Virus record (IMG/VR): IMGVR_UViG_3300018004_000004
Span: 62,001-126,000 of that record
DNA: 64,000 bases
Reading direction: 5' to 3' (one strand)
A model generated the notes under the pieces. That model searched no databases and was not told the origin of the DNA. It worked only from the letters and a program-made list of their open reading frames with translations. The position numbers were made by a program, and so were the translations under genes. Positions 2,245 to 14,988 of this stretch are shown one piece after another. How positions within the stretch are numbered: the stretch's first letter is position 1; each line of letters starts with the position of its first letter.

Positions 2245-2586
2245 ATGTTAGAGACCCCAAAAGAAGTGCTCGGTGAGGGATATCCTCTGCCAACAGAGCA
2301 GGCGCGTAAGGAAACAGCGCCCATCTGGGAACGAGCATTTGAGATACATGCGACGGCACATGTAGGTGATAGTCGCTTCCACGAAGGGAGCATGCTCCCA
2401 GTGAGAGGAGATGAGTATCACAACGGTACTCCCTACTGTGACTGTTACATGCGAGCCTGGCTGGAGTTTCATGATCCTGTAAAGATAGCAGAACCCCAGG
2501 CTATAGTGCGTGAGAAAGAACGACTACGCGAGCTAGAAGAAGAGAGACAGAAGTTCGCGATAGAATACTTTGAGAGAGTTGTATGA
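2245..2586 (+). CDS. hypothetical protein
   Basis: 113-aa ORF, GAGG RBS, ATGA overlap with the next gene. Confidence 0.7.
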   Translation: MLETPKEVLGEGYPLPTEQARKETAPIWERAFEIHATAHVGDSRFHEGSMLPVRGDEYHNGTPYCDCYMRAWLEFHDPVKIAEPQAIVREKERLRELEEERQKFAIEYFERVV

Positions 2587-3482
2587 TCATCGAGCAGGGT
2601 GAATGCAATCTTAAGGATTGGATCAAAGAGGTCGGCATGTCCGGCCGTATGCAGTCTGTCCTTATTGCTTCTTTCCGCGGCGCTGATTCAGACGACTCAC
2701 CGGAAGTAAAGAGAGTCGTACGTTGGATCCGTAAGCAGTGCATCAAGCTGAACAATCCAAGATCTCATTTCATGAGAGACACGGAGTTCATTGATATTAA
2801 AGCTCTTATGGATCAAGATGCCTGGCAATGGGATCGTTTGAAGACACACTTCTACGATCACCTGAAGCAGGCATTGGCAGTCATAGCATTCTTTCATCCT
2901 GATGAGTGGGTGCAGGCAAAAGCACTTAAGGCCTACCACGATCTGACAGAGCACGAGAGCATTGTGCCCGAGGACCGTGTAGACTTGGTCTCGCGATTGG
3001 CAGATACTAAACCGATCGCGCGCGGTGAATGGGTAGTGCAGGACTGGGTCCTGCAGTTGAGTGGTAAGATGCAATCAGCTTTGTTCTGCGCTATGCGCGG
3101 ATCCGATATCTCTACGGAAGATGAAGTCCGAAGATTAACACGCTGGCTGCGTTGGGTAGTCATGAGAGATGTAATGCCAGAGTCGCATTACATGAAAGAC
3201 AGAGAGTTTATGAGCTTAAAGGTCAGATTCGAAATGTATCCATCGGAGTGGGGTAACCTGCCGATTCACTTCCGGCACCACACCCGAGAAGCGCTCGAGA
3301 TCGTGGGATACATGCATCCGGATAAAGACATCCGTGAACGCGCTCTGGCCGCGTATGAAGATATTTGTAAGAAGTCTAAGGGCAAGCCAGAAACAAAGTC
3401 CATCCTGGTAAATCGTATGAAAGATGAGCCGGGCAGGACTGCTGATCCAAATCAGCAACGAACCAACCTTCCGGTAGCTTAA
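2583..3482 (+). CDS. phage protein made of two tandem copies of a ~135-aa helical domain
   Basis: Both halves share DW..SG(R/K)MQS...RG.D...EV.R..RW.R...SH(F/Y)M.D.EF...HF..H...AL......HPD...R(L/M).D. Confidence 0.85.
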   Translation: MIIEQGECNLKDWIKEVGMSGRMQSVLIASFRGADSDDSPEVKRVVRWIRKQCIKLNNPRSHFMRDTEFIDIKALMDQDAWQWDRLKTHFYDHLKQALAVIAFFHPDEWVQAKALKAYHDLTEHESIVPEDRVDLVSRLADTKPIARGEWVVQDWVLQLSGKMQSALFCAMRGSDISTEDEVRRLTRWLRWVVMRDVMPESHYMKDREFMSLKVRFEMYPSEWGNLPIHFRHHTREALEIVGYMHPDKDIRERALAAYEDICKKSKGKPETKSILVNRMKDEPGRTADPNQQRTNLPVA

Positions 3483-3485
3483 CAC

Positions 3486-3561
3486 TGGTAGGTGGTGCAA
3501 ATGGTAGTCACGCCGGGCCTTGAACCCGGAGATCCTGGTTCGAATCCAGGCCTACCAACCA
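3486..3561 (+). tRNA. tRNA-Gln(TTG) with C33
   Basis: CCGGG-CCTTGAA-CCCGG; CCTGG-TTCGAAT-CCAGG; CCA. Confidence 0.92.
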
Positions 3562-3562
3562 T

Positions 3563-3637
3563 GGGTTCGTAGCTTAAAGGTAGAGCAACCGCCTTTTAAG
3601 CGGTGGAATGCTGGTTCAAATCCAGCCGGACCCACCA
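3563..3637 (+). tRNA. tRNA-Lys(TTT)
   Basis: ACCGC-CTTTTAA-GCGGT; CCA. Confidence 0.95.
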
Positions 3638-3726: not shown

Positions 3727-3802
3727 GGGCTTGTAGCTCAGACGGAAGAGCAGCGGAGTTCTAACCCGCAGGCAGAGAGTTCGAATCTCTCCAAGCTCGC
3801 CA
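3727..3802 (+). tRNA. tRNA-Arg(TCT)
   Basis: GCGGA-GTTCTAA-CCCGC (G32, A.C at 31:39); CCA. Confidence 0.9.
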
Positions 3803-3898: not shown

Positions 3899-3973
3899 GC
3901 CATGGTAGCTCCAATGTAGAGCTGCGCACCTGTAATGCGCGGGTTGGGGGTTCAAGTCCCTCCCATGGCTCCA
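3899..3973 (+). tRNA. tRNA-Thr(TGT) with C33
   Basis: GCGCA-CCTGTAA-TGCGC; GCCATGG/CCATGGC acceptor, U73, CCA; D loop lacks GG. Confidence 0.92.
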
Positions 3974-4604: not shown

Positions 4605-4680
4605 GCGGCTGTGATGTTAACGGCCAGCATGTCTGCCTTCCAAGCAGAATGTATCGGTTCGAATCCGATTAGCCGCTCCA
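4605..4680 (+). tRNA. tRNA-Gly(TCC)
   Basis: TCTGC-CTTCCAA-GCAGA; U73; CCA. Confidence 0.95.
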
Positions 4681-4776: not shown

Positions 4777-4853
4777 GCCTCCGTAGCTCAGCCTAGCAGA
4801 GCACCGGGCATCTAACCCGGGGGTCATCCGCGAAACACGGATCGGGGGCTCCA
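4777..4853 (+). ncRNA. non-canonical tRNA-like RNA (nominal TCT anticodon, A33, no D-loop GG, no TTC)
   Basis: All four stems pair (GCCTCCG/CGGGGGC, GCTC/GAGC, CCGGG/CCCGG, ATCCG/CGGAT) and CCA is encoded; loops are AGCCTAGCA, CATCTAA and CGAAACA. Confidence 0.8.
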
Positions 4854-4858
4854 CGATC

Positions 4859-5062
4859 TTGCCTCTGGCTCCTCGTAAGAGGGGTAGTTCAAAGCTCACA
4901 GGGGCGCCAAGTGTAGTAGATGTAATCCGAGTCGCCGATCTTGACGACCTTCAAAGTGAGGTACACCGATGTTCAAACAACATCGGCACCGCCATCTTCA
5001 TCATCGCCACTACGGAAGAGGGCTATATCTTCTACTGGAGTGGGAAGGTGACGGAGTGGTAG
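4859..5062 (+). CDS. hypothetical protein
   Basis: 67-aa ORF, TTG start, fills the gap. Confidence 0.45.
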   Translation: MPLAPRKRGSSKLTGAPSVVDVIRVADLDDLQSEVHRCSNNIGTAIFIIATTEEGYIFYWSGKVTEW

Positions 5063-5085: not shown

Positions 5086-5466
5086 ATGATTCAAGTATCA
5101 GACAGTTTGCTTTCAAATCTCGCGTTGGCACTCGTTGACCAGCTCGGTTTCCCAGCCAATCTGGATGGCGTAACTGCAGTATGGTCGATCGACAACGCGA
5201 ATGTTGGTTCCATTGTGGGCAACAACTTCGCAGCTGTGTTCACACCTGGAACAGATTTGACCGACGTCGGAACCATCACAGCAGCCGTGAGCATCAATGG
5301 CACGTTTGCTTTCAATGTAACCGTCCAGGTCCAGGTTGTATCTGGTGCACCAGTGAGTGGTACAATCACACTGAGTGGCACTTCTCCTCTGCCGGCCGCT
5401 GCACCCGCAGCCCCAGCAGCTCCAGCAGCCCCTGCAGCCCCAGCGGCAACAGGCGCAACAGCCTAA
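5086..5466 (+). CDS. beta-rich (Ig-like) protein with (PAA)n tail
   Basis: TAGGAGG RBS before ATG 5086; alternating beta-strand pattern with WSIDN; C-terminal PAAAPAAPAAPAAPAAPAA. Confidence 0.8.
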   Translation: MIQVSDSLLSNLALALVDQLGFPANLDGVTAVWSIDNANVGSIVGNNFAAVFTPGTDLTDVGTITAAVSINGTFAFNVTVQVQVVSGAPVSGTITLSGTSPLPAAAPAAPAAPAAPAAPAATGATA

Positions 5467-5527: not shown

Positions 5528-5660
5528 TGGTAGCGCGAAAAGCGACAGGTAGCCCCTCTGTATACCGAGGGCAGGTGCTGAATCGTCCCAGACGTGGGGT
5601 GATTTGGAAGTTGGTCCACCGGAAGGCCAGCGCGGTTGTCGTGTAAGCCGTGCGCTATTG
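5528..5660 (+). ncRNA. candidate ~130-nt multi-branched RNA
   Basis: TAGCGC/GCGCTA and GCGACAG/TTGTCGT nested closing stems enclose three hairpins (5552-5572, 5581-5604, 5610-5631). Confidence 0.6.
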
Positions 5661-5678
5661 ATATTCCAAGAGGTTGCT

Positions 5679-5810
5679 ATGTGCACAATGAAGTGTCCTG
5701 TGTGCGGTAAGCAGGTTAGCAAACCTCAGCCTAAAGACGAGTTCGTCTGCCCATGTGGTTGGCGATCGGAAGCAAAAAAGAACAACGGAGAACATCATGA
5801 AGAACAGTAA
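5679..5810 (+). CDS. small zinc-ribbon protein
   Basis: GAGGT RBS; MKCPVCGK...FVCPCGW. Confidence 0.7.
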   Translation: MCTMKCPVCGKQVSKPQPKDEFVCPCGWRSEAKKNNGEHHEEQ

Positions 5811-6088: not shown

Positions 6089-6121
6089 TACTCCCACCTT
6101 TGGCTTGCCGTCCTGGCAGGC

Positions 6122-6127
6122 TATAAT
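6122..6127 (+). promoter_or_regulatory. -10 element TATAAT upstream of tRNA-Asn
   Basis: Consensus hexamer, intergenic; -35 weak. Confidence 0.45.
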
Positions 6128-6145
6128 ACAACATAGAGATTCTAC

Positions 6146-6221
6146 TGGAGTGTGGCTCAACCGGTACAGCATCTGGCCGTTAACCAGACACTTGGGGGTT
6201 CGAGTCCCTCTGCTCCAGCCA
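6146..6221 (+). tRNA. tRNA-Asn(GTT) with C33
   Basis: TCTGG-CCGTTAA-CCAGA; G73; CCA. Confidence 0.92.
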
Positions 6222-6226
6222 AGCTT

Positions 6227-6625
6227 ATGAAAGAGACGCCCAAAGTAGAGAAGCGCATATACGTTGTCCTCCCTTCATTCGTCATATCACCGACGATGTT
6301 CCTAAGAGAGGTCATTCCGATGTCCTGCGGCCGCTGTATAGCACAGGCATGTCATGTGGTATCGAAGCTGAAGCTGAGACTTAAACTGGATCCCGATGAA
6401 GAACACACAACCATCGTCCTCAAAGTCGTTGACAGCGACGAGCTGGAAAAAGTCCGTGATAAGATCTCACGCTCGCGTCTTCCGTGGGAAGAGTTTCGCG
6501 ATACCAACCCCGGGTACTATAAGACTGAAAAGTCCATCCTAACCGCGGTTGCTGTTTGTTGTTCGAGAAAGAAAGGTAAGTCACTGTTCCATGGCTACGA
6601 TGCCTGGCAGTGTGATGTGGAGTAA
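6227..6625 (+). CDS. peptidyl-tRNA hydrolase, Pth2 family
   Basis: MSCGRCIAQACH, IVLKVVDSDELE, EFRD and LTAVA match Pth2 motifs (MS.GK..AQ..HA; K.VLK.....EL; I.D; T...GP). The true start is ATG 6227, after tRNA-Asn. Confidence 0.82.
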   Translation: MKETPKVEKRIYVVLPSFVISPTMFLREVIPMSCGRCIAQACHVVSKLKLRLKLDPDEEHTTIVLKVVDSDELEKVRDKISRSRLPWEEFRDTNPGYYKTEKSILTAVAVCCSRKKGKSLFHGYDAWQCDVE

Positions 6626-6634
6626 ACTCGTGAA

Positions 6635-6720
6635 GAACGATACAATGGGCGGATGCATTCGATTGCTAGGCCTGCTTAGTTAGCAGGCCCGCGGACTGCC
6701 GTCCCCGGACCTTGTAGTTC
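6635..6720 (+). ncRNA. candidate rod-like structured RNA
   Basis: Nested GAAC/GTTC, TACAA/TTGTA, GGGCGG/CCGTCC and terminal GGCCTGCT/AGCAGGCC helices. Confidence 0.4.
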
Positions 6721-6723
6721 AAG

Positions 6724-6802
6724 GCGCTGGTGGACAAAATGGCAAAGCCGCCTCGTTCAGACCGAGGAGATTTTGTGGGTTCGAATCCCACCCAGCGCAC
6801 CA
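6724..6802 (+). tRNA. tRNA-Leu(CAG) lacking the long variable arm
   Basis: CCTCG-TTCAGAC-CGAGG; Leu-type D arm; variable region only AGATTTT; A73; CCA. Confidence 0.88.
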
Positions 6803-7381: not shown

Positions 7382-7471
7382 GGAGGCGCAGCAGAGACGG
7401 GGATCTGCACTTGGCCGTAACCCAAGGTCCCAACGGGACTAGAGAAGGTTCAAATCCTTCCGTCTCCACCA
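7382..7471 (+). tRNA. tRNA-Tyr(GTA) with C33 and C8
   Basis: GGAGGCG/CGTCTCC acceptor; CTTGG-CCGTAAC-CCAAG; GTCCC/GGGAC variable arm; A73; CCA. Confidence 0.9.
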
Positions 7472-8279: not shown

Positions 8280-8357
8280 AGGCCGGTCGTTTAGCCCGGT
8301 CCAGGACCTCGGTCTCCAAAACCGATGACGGTGGTTCAAATCCATCCTGGCCTGCCA
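8280..8357 (+). tRNA. tRNA-Trp(CCA)
   Basis: TCGGT-CTCCAAA-ACCGA; G73; CCA. Confidence 0.95.
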
Positions 8358-8366
8358 AAGGATTTG

Positions 8367-8375
8367 TGGTATAAT
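8367..8375 (+). promoter_or_regulatory. extended -10 promoter element TGGTATAAT
   Basis: Exact TGnTATAAT upstream of the Ser/Ser/Phe tRNA group. Confidence 0.6.
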
Positions 8376-8438
8376 AAAAACATGAACGATACAGCCAACT
8401 CGAGTAGTAGAAGCTCATCACGATCTACCCGTGTATAC

Positions 8439-8877: not shown

Positions 8878-9002
8878 GTAGTCCTTGTATTCTGGCTCTG
8901 CCATTCGGAAATAGCAGAGCGCGTCAATCGGCACGGTGTTGTACAATCCGTGGTGGCGCTCACGGATTACAACGAGACTAATCATCTAGGTCAGTTGTTC
9001 TT

Positions 9003-9296: not shown

Positions 9297-9743
9297 ATGA
9301 GTAATGAAAAGAAAGACGCTACGCTTGGTATGTCACACGGTACGGCTACAAATAGATTACGTAAGCAGATAATGTTTAGATTACTGCAACGTTTGAATGA
9401 GAACTTTTGCTTTCGTTGTGGATGTGAAATACAATCAGTAGATGATCTAAGCATCGAACATAAGCAGCCTTGGGAAGGTATCAGTGCTGACTTATTCTGG
9501 GATGAAGAGAACATTGCCTTTTCTCACTTGCGATGCAATAGACCAGATAGACCAAGCGGTAGAAATGCGAATGCCAAGATTCCACCAATAGAAGGTGTAT
9601 GCTGGTGCGTTCCTGGCGATCATTTTGCTCCAGTCGATAACTTCTACAAGAATGAAAGTAGACCGACAGGATTACAGAACTGGTGCAAGGATCATAGACC
9701 TCCTCGATTAGGAGGCTACCACAAGTTTGCGATGCTCTGTTAG
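9297..9743 (+). CDS. HNH endonuclease with C-terminal Zn-binding domain
   Basis: CFRCG...LSIEHKQPW...NIAFSHLRCN; C-terminal CWC..DHF...NFYKN.SRPTGLQNWCKDH. Confidence 0.88.
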   Translation: MSNEKKDATLGMSHGTATNRLRKQIMFRLLQRLNENFCFRCGCEIQSVDDLSIEHKQPWEGISADLFWDEENIAFSHLRCNRPDRPSGRNANAKIPPIEGVCWCVPGDHFAPVDNFYKNESRPTGLQNWCKDHRPPRLGGYHKFAMLC

Positions 9744-11137: not shown

Positions 11138-11483
11138 GGGGACGTCCCGGTTTCGACAGATAGCGGAACGACCTGAATGCATGCCGGTGCCTGACGACCG
11201 TAACTGTTGGAAAACTTTAACTGCAGAGTTTGAAGAACTGCCGTTGGCTGCTTAAAGCAGCCACGTCCTACCTGACGATGCCTATTGATTGGGCTAGGGC
11301 GTAAACTAGTGGGCTAAGCTTCCCGGGTCAGCTCCCTGCGAGCCGGGCGGATGAAAACCAAGAAGGGATACTGGGACCTCACTTGTCCGGTCTGTAGGCC
11401 CCTGAGAAACCGAACGGAATAAGCATGTAGTATTCATAAGTAATGCTTTCTGGACACGGGTTCAACTCCCGTCGTCTCCACCA
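11138..11483 (+). ncRNA. ssrA: tmRNA; tag ORF 11223-11255 = (A)AEFEELPLAA*
   Basis: 5' GGGGACGTCCCGGTTTCGAC; 3' GACACGGGTTCAACTCCCGTCGTCTCCACCA with G3.U70; TAACT before the GCA resume codon; stop codon inside a hairpin. Confidence 0.96.
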
Positions 11484-11502: not shown

Positions 11503-12258
11503 GTGGCTCTCATAGCATTCGTTGGTGATACACACTACAGGTTCTATGAGATGTATGCTGCGTTGGCTGCCTGGCAACTACGTACAGGCAACCTGTTAGA
11601 CGCGATCATCCACGTAGGTGATTTTGGAGTTGATAAGTTCAATCCCCAGTGGGCTCACCTCTGGGAACGCGACAAGCAAGTTCCAATAGAGACTTATGTA
11701 AACATGGGCAACCATGAGAATCATGAGTCTATCAAAAAGTGGCAAGCCGAGCCTAATAGAATAGCTCGCTTGCACCTCCTGCCAGATGGCGGTGTCACTG
11801 ACATCGCTGGTGTAAAGGTTGCATCCGTCTGGGGAAACTACAGTCCCCGGAGCTGGATGAATCCTGATATAGTTAAGTGCGCAAGGAATCACTCGGTTCC
11901 AGGTAGTTTGAAAGCACTGCATATCTATCGTCCTCACGTTCTTGAGCTTCTCAGGTACGATGGGCCGGTGGATGTCTTAGTTACACATGATTGTTCGACA
12001 GCTGTTGTGCCATGGAAGTTCGCAGGCAAACCAGTACCAGAAGGTCTGCGCGCAGTCCTGGGACTAGATCACGATGAGACAGTACCTCCAGGATGTCCTG
12101 GATTTACGCAGCTGCTCAACAAGTTCAAACCTACATACCATTTCTACGGACACATGCATCTGAAAGACGTTCAGGAAAGGGAAGGAACCAAGGTTATCTG
12201 CCTAAATGCATTCGACTTCAATCAAAACGAAGCAGTTGAGATTGTGGCTTTCAAATAA
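11503..12258 (+). CDS. calcineurin-like metallophosphoesterase (Dbr1-like motif spacing)
   Basis: GDTH, GDFG, GNHE, DVLVTHD, FYGHMH motifs. Confidence 0.92.
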   Translation: MALIAFVGDTHYRFYEMYAALAAWQLRTGNLLDAIIHVGDFGVDKFNPQWAHLWERDKQVPIETYVNMGNHENHESIKKWQAEPNRIARLHLLPDGGVTDIAGVKVASVWGNYSPRSWMNPDIVKCARNHSVPGSLKALHIYRPHVLELLRYDGPVDVLVTHDCSTAVVPWKFAGKPVPEGLRAVLGLDHDETVPPGCPGFTQLLNKFKPTYHFYGHMHLKDVQEREGTKVICLNAFDFNQNEAVEIVAFK

Positions 12259-12744: not shown

Positions 12745-14043
12745 TTAGAGAGCTTCTAGCCTGATATGCAGGGCAAACTTCATAGCATTAGGACTGTTCG
12801 AGGCATATCCGGTTGTATTGTAGCTCAGACCACCACCACCCTTCGCATGGATCACCGCACTCCCTTGCAAGATCGTATTGAATACGTCTCCCGAGTTGGT
12901 CGGCGTCAAAGCCAACCATCCTACCGCTGTATTTGTGTCAGGGTCAGCCCATTGAATCTGGACAGACGGAAGTGTTGATGATACACCATCGACCGTGGTC
13001 AGAACAATGTAGGCCGATACACGATACATTCCGGTCGTGACATTGTACAAAGAAGTACCAGGAATATCAGCGCTCTGAGTGGCTAGATCCACGGCCGCAA
13101 TCTGTGAAGGAACACCTTTGCCCACTGTAACGATGTTGTCGTACTTGGTGATAGTCCCAACGAGCTCCACTCCAGAACTGGTCTTCAGACCATTGGTAGC
13201 GTTTAGAACACCTGTTGGATCCACATAAAGAGGCGCCGCTCCAGAAACACCATTAGCATACCACTCGGTGATGTTGGCAGCACCTGTCCCACCATGGAAA
13301 GCAACTACAGTACCTCCATTATAAACATCGAAGACGGCACCTGAATCTCCGCTAACGATCAACTGACCTGGGCTCAAGGAAGACGATACTCCAGGACCGT
13401 AGAAACTGAATCCGCTAGCATCAATACTTGCAGTATACGTAAATGAGTTAGTGCTTATATAGATGTAGGCACTACCATCAAAGTTATCTGCTATTGTAAA
13501 CTGTCCAGTGGCATCACTACTAAACGGCACTAGACTCAGCATATAATCGCCATTGGAGTCACCGTTGACAGTGACACCAACTCCACTTGGGTTGGTGACA
13601 ATCAACCCACCAGTCAGAGTTCCGCCGGCCAGGTCCAAGTAAAACGAAGAGTAGTCACTATCCTGTGCTGTGACTGCATTCGTACGGCCGAAGACCGATG
13701 ATACAGCACCCCCACCACCTCCAAAAGCAGCTTGAGCAAAGTGACCGGTAGTAGCATCATACGATACCAGAGCCTCTCCAGTGATGCCTGGAGTTGTTAT
13801 AGGTACTATACCTGGTATACCACCAGCGATCTCATTGACCGTTGCCTGGAGGGTGGCAACCTGCTGGGTTACCTCATTCAGCTGGGCTTGGATCGTCAGG
13901 GTTACCTGGCTGATAGTCGTATGGATGCCATTCAGATCCGCTTCGATCGTTGGGACGGCCGCGGCAGAAGGAATAGGCGAAGTGATACCATCCAGAGCTG
14001 TAAGTCTGTTCAGGATTGCGTTTATTTGTGCTGGTGAAGCCAT
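12745..14043 (-). CDS. tail fibre / receptor-binding-like protein
   Basis: N-terminal coiled coil; GAVSSVFGRTNAVTAQDSDY and YLDLAGGTLTGGL fibre motifs; G/T/S-rich beta region. Confidence 0.75.
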   Translation of the reverse strand: MASPAQINAILNRLTALDGITSPIPSAAAVPTIEADLNGIHTTISQVTLTIQAQLNEVTQQVATLQATVNEIAGGIPGIVPITTPGITGEALVSYDATTGHFAQAAFGGGGGAVSSVFGRTNAVTAQDSDYSSFYLDLAGGTLTGGLIVTNPSGVGVTVNGDSNGDYMLSLVPFSSDATGQFTIADNFDGSAYIYISTNSFTYTASIDASGFSFYGPGVSSSLSPGQLIVSGDSGAVFDVYNGGTVVAFHGGTGAANITEWYANGVSGAAPLYVDPTGVLNATNGLKTSSGVELVGTITKYDNIVTVGKGVPSQIAAVDLATQSADIPGTSLYNVTTGMYRVSAYIVLTTVDGVSSTLPSVQIQWADPDTNTAVGWLALTPTNSGDVFNTILQGSAVIHAKGGGGLSYNTTGYASNSPNAMKFALHIRLEAL

Positions 14044-14053
14044 TGTATTCCCC

Positions 14054-14608
14054 TTATTGAGCCATGAAGGCCGCTTCCTGGCCGAGCCATTGGCGCGCGT
14101 TCATCAAAGATGCTGACATCTCTCGAGCAGCCACCTGCCTCATCGTATGAGCAGTAGCTGTATCTCTATAATCTCCACCGAAGTTAACTCTCCGTTGGTT
14201 GGTGCCGAAGTCCACGAGAGGTTGGATTGCTCCTTGGAACATCCTATCCATAGTCGGCTGGACCATAGCCTGCAAAGCCAGGTCCGTAAGCATAGGAGGC
14301 AAGCCTGTAAGAGCACTAACTCCAACAGATAGAGCAGTTGTCACTCCGATCGATAACCCAGTTGCCAGGCCAGAGGACAGCTTCTGGTGCCGCGGCGCCA
14401 TGATAGCAGACTGAACACCAAAGCCGAGAGCAAAAGGAAACGACCCCTTGCCTACAGATCCCCAGGCCTTAGGTAGGCGCGCGGCCGGAGTCAAACTAGC
14501 ATAGCTCTTCCAGCCCCTCATTGTCGACATGGCTTTGTTACGGCCCCAGTTGACAGGACTGAACGGCATAGGTGCAGGCATGGTATCCGCTACGTTGATT
14601 CTAATCAT
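14054..14608 (-). CDS. hypothetical protein with hydrophobic Gly/Ala segments (possible virion protein)
   Basis: Inside the structural operon; C-terminal TMRQ.A...M..S..NAR..LG.EA..M. Confidence 0.7.
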   Translation of the reverse strand: MIRINVADTMPAPMPFSPVNWGRNKAMSTMRGWKSYASLTPAARLPKAWGSVGKGSFPFALGFGVQSAIMAPRHQKLSSGLATGLSIGVTTALSVGVSALTGLPPMLTDLALQAMVQPTMDRMFQGAIQPLVDFGTNQRRVNFGGDYRDTATAHTMRQVAAREMSASLMNARQWLGQEAAFMAQ

Positions 14609-14988
14609 TTCACAGTCTCCGCGTACTTACGCAGAGTCTCTCTTGTCTCATCCGGATGGTTGAGGATGTCACACTCCCATAAGATGAGTAGTTTGAAGCC
14701 TTTACGCCCCAGGTACTGATACCTATGGATGTCCTGGAATCGTTTCATCTGTTGCTTCCGAGTCTTCTTTGGATAGCAACGGTGGCAGCAGTGCCAGTAG
14801 CAGCCATTCAACTCTACGGCGCCCTTCTTGCCTATCACAATATCGATATGACAGCGCCCACATCTCACCTCAGTACGATAAGGAATCCCATCGGCATCTA
14901 ACCAAGCAGCCACCAGCTTCTCGATCGAAGTCTTAGGACGCTTGCGATTATGCTTTCGTGCGGCCGATCGCGGGATTCCTTTTCTCAT
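14605..14988 (-). CDS. Vsr/DUF559-like PD-(D/E)xK endonuclease
   Basis: TSIEKLV, HIDIV, AVELNGCYWHCCHRC, GFKLLILWECD. Confidence 0.85.
   Translation of the reverse strand: MRKGIPRSAARKHNRKRPKTSIEKLVAAWLDADGIPYRTEVRCGRCHIDIVIGKKGAVELNGCYWHCCHRCYPKKTRKQQMKRFQDIHRYQYLGRKGFKLLILWECDILNHPDETRETLRKYAETVK

What the first reader, a model, noticed from the sequence alone, without database searches (positions are those of the whole stretch)
4777..4853. Fully paired tRNA-shaped RNA that has lost its conserved loop nucleotides
Seen: all four stems pair and CCA is encoded. The D loop (AGCCTAGCA) has no GG, the T loop (CGAAACA) has no TTC, and position 33 is A (CATCTAA). The acceptor GCC/GGC-U73 looks Thr-like while the nominal anticodon is TCT. 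A normal tRNA-Arg(TCT) already exists at 3727. Inference: stems kept while elbow and U-turn residues changed together suggests a functional non-decoding tRNA mimic. It could be a decoy for nucleases or sensors, an aminoacyl donor outside the ribosome, or a processing signal.
Basis: partly seen in the sequence, partly recalled or inferred. Interest (0 to 1): 0.7.

Follow-up and report, generated by a model that had tools for sequence, protein, structure and literature searches.

The report
Elbow-less tRNA-like gene in jumbo phage
A giant phage and its relatives keep, under clear natural selection, a tRNA-shaped RNA gene derived from tRNA-Thr that has given up the loop nucleotides every normal tRNA needs, so it probably works outside ordinary decoding, perhaps in the phage-host fight over tRNAs.

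Summary
Window 4777-4853 (+) folds as a perfect 21-pair cloverleaf with U73 and an encoded CCA. It has no GG in the D loop, no TTC in the T loop, and A at position 33. ARAGORN and the Rfam tRNA model do not call it.

It is neither chance nor a decaying pseudogene. Eleven distinct syntenic homologues occur in related ~210-kb phages, usually just after tRNA-Gly(UCC). Across them 97% of stem cells pair and 12 of 21 pairs show compensatory double changes.

- Conserved: the top of the acceptor stem (G1-C72, C2-G71, mostly U4·G69), U73-CCA, U8-A9, the D stem, the variable loop, and anticodon-loop positions 34, 36 and 37 (U-N-U-A).
- Not conserved: the D-loop interior and the T loop. The T loop never reads TTC.

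Some members have 6-nt anticodon loops, a ~38-nt insertion at the T arm, or fused arms. The body is closest to the phages' tRNA-Thr, while the anticodon is mostly UCU.

My best reading (about 0.4) is a non-decoding tRNA mimic, most likely a bait for tRNA-directed host enzymes. The main rival is a nuclease-proof spare decoder. No expression data could be obtained.

The parts
4777..4853 (+). The tRNA-like gene itself: 7/4/5/5-bp cloverleaf, D loop without GG, anticodon loop CATCTAA (A33, UCU), variable loop GGGTC, T loop CGAAACA, U73, encoded CCA.
   Evidence: Sequence; MFE fold; 92 bits to family model R1; only copy in the genome; covariation across 11 homologues.
4861..4909 (+). Second, smaller acceptor-like element 8 nt downstream. 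It has a 7-bp stem, GCCTCTG/CAGGGGC, whose first five pairs match the candidate's acceptor (including U4.G69). The stem encloses a GTAA-capped hairpin and a short TTCAAAG segment, followed by G and CCA.
   Evidence: Fold -21.7 kcal/mol, z = -2.9, 0 of 200 shuffles as good. The same kind of element lies next to the homologue in L122, L124, L126, L129, L134 (two copies) and L135, with compensatory changes at pairs 1-72 and 5-7 and U4.G69 kept in all.
4605..4680 (+). tRNA-Gly(UCC), the syntenic anchor. In most relatives the tRNA-like gene follows it within 2-100 nt.
3899..3973 (+). tRNA-Thr(UGU), the closest canonical paralogue. It shares GCC.../...GGC, TA-GCTC...GAGC, variable GGGTT, U73 and CCA, and it has C33.
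3727..3802 (+). Canonical tRNA-Arg(UCU) with a normal elbow, U33 and G73. It makes the candidate redundant as an AGA decoder.
5530..5665 (+). Conserved structured RNA of unknown kind (closing stem plus four hairpins). In relatives it starts 1-10 nt after the tRNA-like gene or minihelix. Here it is separated from them by ORF 5086-5466. It may be a co-transcribed partner; membership in the same functional unit is not shown.
   Evidence: RNAalifold on 8 homologues: 40 pairs, 20 with compensatory changes. No Rfam match at E<=10.

Best explanation
The locus encodes a real, selected, tRNA-Thr-derived tRNA-like RNA that is matured like a tRNA. It sits in the tRNA array on the same strand, has a 7-bp acceptor stem and an encoded CCA, and is probably cut out by RNase P and 3' trimming. 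It probably no longer serves as a ribosomal decoder. It keeps an acceptor end (G1-C72, C2-G71, U4.G69, U73-CCA), the tRNA core (U8-A9, D stem, variable loop) and an anticodon-arm hairpin showing U34-N-U36-A37-R38. This is the loop type of tRNAs that read ANA codons, here UCU as in tRNA-Arg. It has dropped the G18-G19/T54-Psi55-C56 elbow and, in most members, U33.

My favoured mechanism is inferred, not shown. The RNA, together with the adjacent acceptor-stem minihelix, would act as a bait or poor substrate for host enzymes that attack tRNAs during infection: T-loop, anticodon-loop or CCA-tail nucleases, or 3'-end modifiers. The missing elbow and U-turn would keep it out of translation.

Shown: the gene family, its selection, what is and is not conserved, and its tRNA-Thr ancestry. 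Inferred: processing, non-decoding status and the bait function.
For: 1) Eleven distinct syntenic homologues in relatives whose neighbouring 299-aa protein is 61-89% identical. 97.4% of stem cells pair, 12 of 21 pairs have double compensatory changes, and the covariation score is 0.635 against 0.195 in shuffles (0 of 500 reach it).
2) Conservation is the reverse of a normal tRNA. Mean pairwise identity is 0.53 for the T loop and 0.60 for the D loop, against 0.71 for the anticodon loop, 0.85 for the variable loop and 1.0 for the D stem, positions 8-9 and 73. No member has TTC in the T loop or GG in the D loop.
3) Several members have features that are hard to reconcile with decoding. L126 and L136 have 6-nt anticodon loops; L126 is seen in three independent contigs. 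L121 and L122 have a ~38-nt two-hairpin insertion at the T arm that itself shows compensatory change. L124 has one long hairpin in place of the anticodon and T arms.
4) Nominal anticodons differ (UCU in 8, UUU, UAU) while the Thr-like acceptor and U73 never change, so aminoacylation identity does not track the anticodon.
5) A canonical tRNA-Arg(UCU) is present in the window and in most relatives where the array was recovered. AGA is only 4.7 per 1000 codons, so there is no codon demand.
6) A second element that keeps only the same acceptor stem plus NCCA recurs beside it. This points to the acceptor end as a functional core.
7) The genome is equipped for conflict over tRNAs: two RNA-ligase ORFs, a metallophosphoesterase next to the tmRNA and a PTH2 in the array, and C33 in 28 of 191 canonical tRNAs of this clade.
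8) Published host effectors fit the altered sites. Cash cleaves the T loop at UUC, needs U54 and U55, and also cuts before UC in anticodon loops (PMC13462974). Cas13b6 cuts after U in anticodon loops, including excision of U33 (PMC13692257). Cas12a3 cuts CCA tails and accepts minimal acceptor-stem substrates (PMC12851939).
Against: There is no direct evidence of expression, processing, charging or binding. The two metatranscriptomes that contain the phage do not cover this small RNA. A stoichiometric bait must compete with the whole cellular tRNA pool. No promoter-like site lies upstream. C33 in clearly canonical tRNAs of the same phages, and A33 in a few otherwise normal bacterial tRNA-Arg(UCU) genes, show that a non-U33 loop need not abolish decoding. 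tRNAPyl (my own knowledge) shows that a tRNA without a canonical elbow can be used by bacterial ribosomes. A bait does not obviously need a conserved U4.G69 or conserved U73. The T-arm insertion in L121 and L122 could be read as a long variable arm, which ribosomes tolerate.
Confidence: 0.4

Rival explanations
1. Nuclease-proof spare decoder. The RNA is still a working tRNA, read as UCU (Arg) here. Its T loop, D loop and position 33 have been rewritten so that host nucleases that need UUC in the T loop or anticodon loop, or U33, cannot cut it. It backs up the canonical tRNA-Arg(UCU) when that one is destroyed.
For: Full cloverleaf geometry, G53-C61, A57, a 7-nt T loop, A37 and CCA are kept. 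A33 removes the U33-U34-C35 'UUC' from the anticodon loop without touching the anticodon, and the T loop lacks UUC, matching Cash requirements (PMC13462974). C33 is common in canonical tRNAs of this clade. Phage tRNAs are known to escape nucleases through loop mutations (PMC10264068). Other phages carry otherwise normal tRNAs with A18 in the D loop and G55 in the T loop. One family member (L134) passes the Rfam tRNA threshold (44 bits) and ARAGORN calls L135 as Arg-tct. RNA ligases are present in the genome.
Against: Only this one tRNA of 32 has a rewritten T loop, which would not help against a general T-loop nuclease. Two members have 6-nt anticodon loops, two have the T-arm insertion and one has fused arms. 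The anticodon changes between orthologues without any change in acceptor or discriminator. ArgRS determinants known from E. coli (A20, A/G73; my own knowledge) are absent. There is no AGA demand. L121 and L136 keep UUC in the anticodon loop.
Confidence: 0.22
2. Processing and stability module. The tRNA-like fold and the minihelix serve mainly as RNase P and 3'-end processing signals. They punctuate the array transcript and define the 5' end of the conserved structured RNA and small ORF that follow.
For: In most relatives the conserved structured RNA begins 1-10 nt after the tRNA-like gene or minihelix. Acceptor stem plus CCA is the part most conserved, and it is shared with the minihelix. T4 also makes small RNAs of unknown role (RNAC, RNAD) from its tRNA region (PMC3014915).
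Against: A pure processing signal does not explain the conserved U34, U36, A37, the covarying anticodon stem, the invariant D stem and variable loop, or the fixed U73. In the window an ORF separates it from the downstream RNA. Ordinary tRNAs flank many other genes in the array and could do the same job.
Confidence: 0.12
3. Aminoacyl carrier outside the ribosome. The RNA is charged (Thr-like acceptor) and donates its amino acid to a transferase, kept away from EF-Tu and ribosomes by its altered elbow, like the staphylococcal non-proteogenic tRNA-Gly.
For: The precedent has the same signature: TGC or TGT instead of TTC in the T loop, no pseudouridine, and poor EF-Tu and ribosome binding (PMC7826273). 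The family has a conserved acceptor top, U73 and CCA.
Against: The phage genome contains no FemAB, Acetyltransf_6, LPG_synthase_C or Leu/Phe-transferase domain, and no class IIb synthetase or ArgRS. G35, a main ThrRS determinant in E. coli (my own knowledge), is absent in every member. The conserved anticodon-loop 3' half is unexplained. The minihelix has a different discriminator (G or A).
Confidence: 0.08
4. Decaying tRNA pseudogene with no function.
For: Not called by tRNA finders. A redundant canonical tRNA-Arg(UCU) exists. The T and D loops are degenerate. L124 looks badly rearranged.
Against: All 21 pairs are intact here and 97% are intact across 11 diverged homologues, with 12 pairs showing double compensatory changes. 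Positions 8-9, the D stem, position 73 and the CCA are invariant. The position is syntenic across phages whose neighbouring protein is only 61-89% identical.
Confidence: 0.03

Closest known systems
Non-proteogenic tRNA-Gly of Staphylococcus (cell-wall glycine donors; PMC7826273)
   Same: A tRNA paralogue kept beside a normal isoacceptor. Cloverleaf and CCA end are intact. The T loop lacks TTC (TGC or TGT) and the D/T arms are altered. It binds EF-Tu and ribosomes poorly and works outside translation.
   Different: Those are bacterial, keep the cognate Gly anticodon and identity, and have known partner enzymes (FmhB, FemA, FemB). Here the body is Thr-like with a non-Thr anticodon, U33 is often lost, the T loop is hypervariable, and no transferase was found in the phage.
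Phage tRNAs with loop mutations that escape host tRNA nucleases (PMC10264068; PMC11555353; PMC12409363)
   Same: Phage-encoded, located in tRNA arrays, and differing from host-type tRNAs at nuclease recognition positions in a loop. The genome also carries RNA-repair-type genes.
   Different: The described cases are fully canonical tRNAs changed only in the anticodon loop, and they still decode. This family has also lost the elbow, includes members with 6-nt loops and arm insertions, and does not keep one anticodon.
T4 RNAC and RNAD, small stable RNAs from the T4 tRNA region (PMC3014915; PMC9697503)
   Same: Non-tRNA small RNAs encoded inside a phage tRNA cluster, presumably released by tRNA-processing enzymes, with function unknown.
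   Different: No sequence or structural relationship was tested. The present RNA is a complete cloverleaf clearly derived from tRNA-Thr.
tRNAPyl (my own knowledge; reviews PMC11363022, PMC11764691 were listed but not read)
   Same: Lacks G18-G19 and T54-Psi55-C56 yet is a stable L-shaped tRNA. This shows that elbow consensus is not strictly required.
   Different: tRNAPyl has a CUA anticodon with U33, a 6-bp anticodon stem, a 3-nt variable loop, one nucleotide between the acceptor and D stems, and its own synthetase. None of these features is present here.
Canonical phage tRNA-Thr(UGU/CGU) of the same genomes
   Same: Same acceptor start and end (GCC.../...GGC), U8-A9, D stem GCTC/GAGC, variable loop GGGTY, U73 and encoded CCA. 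These are the highest non-family scores with model R1 (60-72 bits).
   Different: tRNA-Thr keeps GGTTCRAnTCC in the T arm and G35. The family has neither.

Membership tests
Canonical elongator tRNA (Rfam RF00005) | Cloverleaf with 7-bp acceptor, 4-bp D, 5-bp anticodon and 5-bp T stems | tested here: met
   covariation.
Canonical elongator tRNA (Rfam RF00005) | G18-G19 in the D loop and T54-Psi55-C56 in the T loop (elbow) | tested here: not met
   D loop AGCCTAGCA and T loop CGAAACA. No family member has both.
Canonical elongator tRNA (Rfam RF00005) | U33 and a 7-nt anticodon loop | tested here: not met
   A33 here and in 5 other distinct homologues. Two homologues have 6-nt loops.
Canonical elongator tRNA (Rfam RF00005) | Score at or above the family gathering threshold (29 bits) | tested here: not met
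   No hit at E<=10 even on the 81-nt stretch. One homologue (L134) does pass, at 44 bits.
Canonical elongator tRNA (Rfam RF00005) | Core nucleotides U8, A14, A21, G53-C61, purine 57, purine 37, and 3' CCA | tested here: met
tRNA-Arg(UCU) | Anticodon UCU with C35 | tested here: met
   Loop CATCTAA. UCU in 8 of 10 homologues that have an anticodon arm.
tRNA-Arg(UCU) | Arg-type body: A20 in the D loop, A/G73, and similarity to the phage's own tRNA-Arg | tested here: not met
   D loop ends GCA and the discriminator is U. The alignment with window and L136 tRNA-Arg(UCU) shows different acceptor, variable loop and discriminator. tRNA-Arg scores 50 bits with R1, against 60-72 for tRNA-Thr. That A20 and position 73 are ArgRS determinants is my own knowledge from E. 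coli.
tRNA-Thr | G1-C72, C2-G71 and the discriminator used by the phage's tRNA-Thr (U73) | tested here: met
tRNA-Thr | Anticodon NGU (G35, U36) | tested here: not met
   Position 35 is C, U or A and never G in any member. U36 is invariant.
Staphylococcus-type non-proteogenic tRNA | T loop without TTC, altered D loop, and a normal isoacceptor present | tested here: met
   precedent in PMC7826273.
Staphylococcus-type non-proteogenic tRNA | A partner aminoacyl-tRNA transferase | tested here: not met
   No FemAB, Acetyltransf_6, LPG_synthase_C or Leu_Phe_trans domain in the 215-kb phage genome. A host-encoded partner cannot be excluded.
Staphylococcus-type non-proteogenic tRNA | Aminoacylated in vivo but weak EF-Tu and ribosome binding | not testable with these tools
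   Needs acid-gel charging and EF-Tu or ribosome binding assays.
tRNA pseudogene | Substitutions fall on stems and loops alike; no compensatory change among orthologues | tested here: not met
   97.4% of cells paired, 12 of 21 pairs with double changes, 0 of 500 shuffles as high.
tRNAPyl | CUA at positions 34-36, 6-bp anticodon stem, 3-nt variable loop, one nucleotide between acceptor and D stems | tested here: not met
   UCU at 34-36, 5-bp stem, 5-nt variable loop, two nucleotides (TA) at positions 8-9.

The most novel reading that the evidence does not exclude
A clade of ~210-kb phages encodes a dedicated set of tRNA mimics: an elbow-less, U-turn-less tRNA-Thr derivative that displays a tRNA-Arg(UCU)-type anticodon loop, plus one or two acceptor-stem/CCA minihelices. 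These RNAs would be released by the tRNA-processing machinery and would act as RNA baits or inhibitors of tRNA-directed bacterial immunity (T-loop, anticodon-loop or CCA-tail nucleases, or 3'-end modifiers). That would be an RNA-based anti-defence principle not yet described.
Probability: 0.25. Interest if true: 0.85.

Novelty: new variant of a known kind. Interest (0 to 1): 0.66.

Why it matters
tRNAs are now known to be a main battlefield between phages and bacteria. Host effectors include PrrC, PARIS, retron effectors, Schlafen/Cash, Cas13 and Cas12a3.

The phage countermeasures described so far are canonical tRNAs with a few loop changes, or repair enzymes. A conserved phage RNA that keeps the tRNA frame and acceptor end but discards the universally conserved elbow and U-turn would be a different kind of countermeasure: either a non-decoding mimic or an unusually rebuilt decoder.

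In both cases it shows which tRNA features can be dispensed with under selection. It also gives a natural test substrate for nucleases that recognise the T loop, U33 or the CCA tail.

It exposes a blind spot as well. ARAGORN and the Rfam tRNA model miss the window gene; among the homologues, ARAGORN calls only L135 and Rfam only L134. Similar genes may therefore be common in viral metagenomes.

Tried and rejected
- Near and protein BLAST against GenBank phages found nothing.
- The downstream ORF (5086-5463) found no relatives in viral contigs.
- The exact D-arm/T-loop pattern found only an identical contig. L005, L119, L139 and L140 are 100% identical copies of the same phage and carry no comparative information.
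- The metagenome scan with the neighbour-protein alignment added no new variants.
- Metatranscriptomes X1 and X2 contain the phage (perfect contigs over 5092-5445 and 6627-6798) but nothing over 4777-4909. This is uninformative, because these are Logan contigs of standard libraries.
- The promoter/terminator scan shows nothing next to the gene.
- A T-box-like or kissing-loop link between the anticodon loop and the downstream structured RNA was considered and dropped. The AGA in one hairpin loop of the window copy is not conserved in L121 or L122.
- Reading the loop as a shifted CUA/UUA suppressor anticodon was considered, because U-YUA-R is common to most members. It was rejected as the primary reading. 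Long ORFs are open under table 11, stops are 49 TAA, 11 TAG and 11 TGA, and U36-A37-A38 is the normal context of NNU anticodons.
- The reverse strand was checked by eye and is not tRNA-like.
- The conserved 299-aa neighbour protein (2583-3479) was modelled (pLDDT 86). It has no informative fold match in PDB or the AlphaFold clusters, so it gives no functional clue.
- The A33-UCU pattern scan in 185,579 genomes gave 9 hits. Six of them are ordinary tRNA-Arg(UCU)-type cloverleaves (ARAGORN confirms the Arg-tct call for the three checked) and do not score as family members.
- Two recurrent viral sequences that match the same pattern do not fold as cloverleaves and were not pursued.

Full report
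**What is there.** Window 4777-4853 (+) reads as a textbook cloverleaf in geometry but not in its loops.
- Acceptor GCCTCCG/CGGGGGC, TA at positions 8-9, D stem GCTC/GAGC.
- D loop AGCCTAGCA, A26, anticodon stem CCGGG/CCCGG, anticodon loop CATCTAA.
- Variable loop GGGTC, T stem ATCCG/CGGAT, T loop CGAAACA, then U73 and CCA.

This cloverleaf is the minimum-free-energy fold (-32.1 kcal/mol, z = -2.2). ARAGORN does not report it at any threshold. The Rfam tRNA model gives no hit at E<=10, even when only the 81 nt are searched.

**Chance.** I scanned both strands of the whole genome for perfect 7/4/5/5-bp cloverleaves followed by N+CCA, with no demand on loop sequence. The scan finds 11: ten annotated tRNAs and this element. 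Twenty first-order Markov random genomes of the same size contain none.

**Context.** The window is bases 62001-126000 of a 215,395-bp IMG/VR phage record.
- It is a myovirus, with a tail sheath and baseplate.
- The element lies inside a same-strand array of about 26 tRNAs plus a tmRNA. The genome has 31 ARAGORN tRNAs in all, each with a canonical GTTCRAnnC T arm and an encoded CCA.
- The array also holds a PTH2-like ORF, and a metallophosphoesterase sits next to the tmRNA.
- Two RNA-ligase-family ORFs lie elsewhere in the genome.
- No class IIb synthetase, ArgRS or CCA-adding enzyme was found.
- No FemAB, Acetyltransf_6, LPG_synthase_C or Leu/Phe-transferase domain was found.

**Homologues.** GenBank phages hold nothing similar, and identical contigs carry no information. 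The conserved 299-aa protein 1.3 kb upstream (2583-3479) has a graded series of relatives at 51-89% identity. Fetching their contigs and scanning for acceptor + D arm + NCCA without loop constraints gave ten further distinct homologues. They usually lie just downstream of tRNA-Gly(UCC) or, in L136, tRNA-Gly(GCC).

| Homologue | Coordinates | Support |
|---|---|---|
| L122 | 4917-5029 | single contig |
| L121 | 6102-6213 | also L142 |
| L124 | 19059-18989 (minus strand) | single contig |
| L126 | 13102-13177 | also L127, L128 |
| L129 | 12924-12999 | also L130, L131 |
| L132 | 14565-14637 | single contig |
| L134 | 9323-9397 | single contig |
| L135 | 1811-1884 | single contig |
| L136 | 8348-8423 | single contig |
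| L137 | 8907-8980 | single contig |

**Selection.** I counted pairs on the 11-sequence alignment with the cloverleaf imposed.
- 97.4% of cells form standard pairs, against 76% in shuffles and 31-52% when partners are slid by 1-3 columns.
- 12 of 21 pairs show changes on both sides.
- The covariation score is 0.635 against 0.195 in shuffles; 0 of 500 shuffles reach it.
- The acceptor, anticodon and T stems all covary. The D stem is invariant.

**What is conserved.** Mean pairwise identity among seven four-arm members:

| Region | Identity |
|---|---|
| Positions 8-9, D stem, position 73 | 1.0 |
| Variable loop | 0.85 |
| Anticodon loop | 0.71 |
| D loop | 0.60 |
| T loop | 0.53 (as low as the freely covarying stems) |

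- T loops read CGAAACA, CGGAACA, CGCAACA, AGAATTA, GTCAGCA and CCAAACG. None has TTC. Only G53-C61 and A57 are constant.
- D loops keep A14, R15 and A21 but never GG.
- The anticodon loop aligns as (N)(A/U)-U-N-U-A-R. U34, U36 and A37 are invariant. Position 35 is C in eight members, U in one and A in one, and never G.
- Position 33 is A in six distinct members whose stems all differ. A33 is therefore selected, or at least tolerated over a long time.
- In the acceptor, G1-C72 and C2-G71 are invariant, and U4·G69 is present in 9 of 11.

**Origin.** A covariance model of the family (R1) scores members as follows.
- Typical members score 82-92 bits, the aberrant members 62-68, and L124 scores 40.
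- The best non-members are the phages' tRNA-Thr genes at 60-72 bits. tRNA-Arg(UCU) scores about 50.
- Only one copy exists in the window's genome.

A side-by-side alignment shows that the family shares the acceptor ends, D arm, variable loop and U73 with tRNA-Thr, not with tRNA-Arg. The family is therefore a tRNA-Thr paralogue whose position 35 is no longer G.

**Features that argue against ordinary decoding.**
- L126 (three independent contigs) and L136 have 6-nt anticodon loops.
- L121 and L122 carry a ~38-nt insertion with two hairpins at the 5' side of the T arm. The insertion is conserved between them, with compensatory change in one hairpin and in acceptor pair 6-67.
- L124 has a single long hairpin in place of the anticodon and T arms. 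L132 has a 4-bp T stem with a 9-nt loop.
- The nominal anticodon varies between three amino-acid identities while the acceptor and discriminator never change.
- The window and most relatives where the array was recovered also have a canonical tRNA-Arg(UCU). AGA is only 4.7 per 1000 codons.

**Counter-evidence.**
- 28 of 191 canonical tRNAs of this phage clade have C33 (Gln, Thr, Asn, Ile, Lys, Val, Met, Glu). A tRNA-Tyr missed by the finders also has it (7382-7468, 39 bits).
- Seven bacterial genomes have an A33-UCU loop in a tRNA-shaped gene. Six of these have normal bodies, and ARAGORN calls the three checked as tRNA-Arg(UCU).
- A non-U33 loop alone therefore does not prove loss of decoding.

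**Neighbours.**
- Eight nucleotides downstream, 4861-4909 forms a second acceptor-like helix. Its first five pairs repeat the candidate's acceptor, including U4·G69. It encloses a GNRA-capped hairpin and ends in G-CCA (z = -2.9).
- Equivalent minihelices lie beside the homologue in L122, L124, L126, L129, L134 (two copies) and L135. They show compensatory changes and an invariant C2-G71, C3-G70 and U4·G69.
- Further downstream is a ~140-nt structured RNA with 20 of 40 pairs covarying and no Rfam match. In relatives it follows directly; here it comes after an inserted ORF. A small zinc-ribbon ORF follows it.

**Literature.**
- Host effectors are known that cut the T loop at UUC, need U54 and U55, and also cut before UC in anticodon loops (Cash; PMC13462974).
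- Others cut after U in anticodon loops, including excision of U33 (Cas13b6; PMC13692257).
- Cas12a3 cuts CCA tails and accepts minimal acceptor-stem substrates (PMC12851939).
- Phage tRNAs escape anticodon nucleases through loop mutations (PMC10264068).
- Staphylococcal non-proteogenic tRNA-Gly is a natural precedent for a T-loop-altered tRNA that works outside the ribosome (PMC7826273).
- T4 makes two small RNAs of unknown role from its tRNA region (PMC3014915).
- I found no description of a phage tRNA-like decoy.

**Interpretation.**
- Shown: a selected, tRNA-Thr-derived RNA gene family that keeps the acceptor end, the core and the 3' half of the anticodon loop, but not the elbow.
- Inferred: it is processed like a tRNA, it no longer decodes, and, with the minihelix, it acts as a bait or poor substrate for tRNA-directed host enzymes. 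Overall confidence is about 0.4, of which the bait function itself is about 0.25.
- Rivals: a nuclease-proof spare decoder (0.22), a processing and stability module for the downstream RNA (0.12), an aminoacyl donor (0.08) and a pseudogene (0.03).

**Expression.** Two metatranscriptomes hold perfect contigs of the neighbouring ORF but nothing over the small RNA. This is uninformative for a 77-nt structured RNA in standard libraries.

**Novelty.** This is a new variant of a known kind, the non-canonical tRNA paralogue. It is not represented in Rfam and is largely missed by standard tRNA finders: among the homologues ARAGORN calls only L135 and Rfam only L134.

Noticed in passing
window 3486-3561, 3899-3973, 6146-6221; genome 205087-205162; many tRNAs in L121-L149: About 15% (28 of 191) of the otherwise canonical tRNAs of this phage clade have C instead of the near-universal U at position 33 (Gln-UUG, Thr-UGU/CGU, Asn-GUU, Ile-GAU, Lys-UUU, Val-UAC, Met-CAU, Glu-UUC). 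This suggests systematic remodelling of the U-turn nucleotide, possibly to escape U-specific anticodon-loop nucleases.
   Followed up: partly
window 7382-7471: A class-II tRNA-Tyr(GUA) with loop CCGTAAC (C33), a normal T loop and CCA. ARAGORN and the whole-window Rfam scan both miss it, but it scores 39 bits when searched locally. Orthologues lie at L121:8607-8696 and L122:6882-6971.
   Followed up: yes
window 4861-4909: Acceptor-stem minihelix ending in G-CCA. It shares its first five pairs, including U4.G69, with the tRNA-like gene. It recurs in six relatives, with two copies in L134.
   Followed up: partly
window 5530-5665: Conserved ~140-nt structured RNA (closing stem plus four hairpins; 20 of 40 pairs with compensatory changes) with no Rfam match. 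It lies upstream of a Shine-Dalgarno site and a small zinc-ribbon ORF starting at 5680.
   Followed up: partly
L002:5211-5287(-), L072:4097-4173, L092:2039-2115, L017:3471-3547, L110:1377-1453: In unrelated phages, tRNAs with A18 instead of G18 in the D loop tend to have G55 in the T loop (CGCGCAT, TGCAAAT, TGCGAAT, GGCAGAT, AGCATAT), while keeping C56, U33 and normal anticodon loops. This is an apparent A18:G55 covariation and the same TGC signature as staphylococcal non-proteogenic tRNA-Gly.
   Followed up: partly
L164:4215-4291(-) (Armatimonadota MAG, 1.36-Mb contig): A stand-alone tRNA-like gene in a bacterial genome with the same set of oddities: GCC.../...GGC acceptor, U73, D loop without GG, loop TATCTAA (A33, UCU) and T loop CTAGCAA. 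It has no CCA, has a promoter-like site upstream and a T run downstream, and lies near four tandem tRNA-Gln genes.
   Followed up: partly
window 5086-5466: ORF with a C-terminal Pro-Ala repeat, inserted between the minihelix and the conserved RNA only in this lineage. It has no Pfam or PHROG match, and it is the part of the region seen as perfect contigs in two metatranscriptomes.
   Followed up: partly
window 2583-3482: Conserved 299-aa all-helical protein made of two homologous halves, found next to the tRNA array in all relatives. The AlphaFold model is confident (pLDDT 86) but matches no known fold or family.
   Followed up: yes
window 3502-3574 (-): ARAGORN's minus-strand 'tRNA-Arg(tcg)' overlaps tRNA-Gln and tRNA-Lys on the plus strand. 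It is a mirror-image false positive, and Rfam does not report it.
   Followed up: yes
window 6152-6625, 11138-11483, 11503-12258; genome 194046-195332 and 213944-215083: A translation and RNA-repair toolkit: a PTH2-like peptidyl-tRNA hydrolase inside the array, a tmRNA (tag AEFEELPLAA), a calcineurin-like phosphoesterase beside the tmRNA, and two RNA-ligase-family ORFs elsewhere in the genome.
   Followed up: partly
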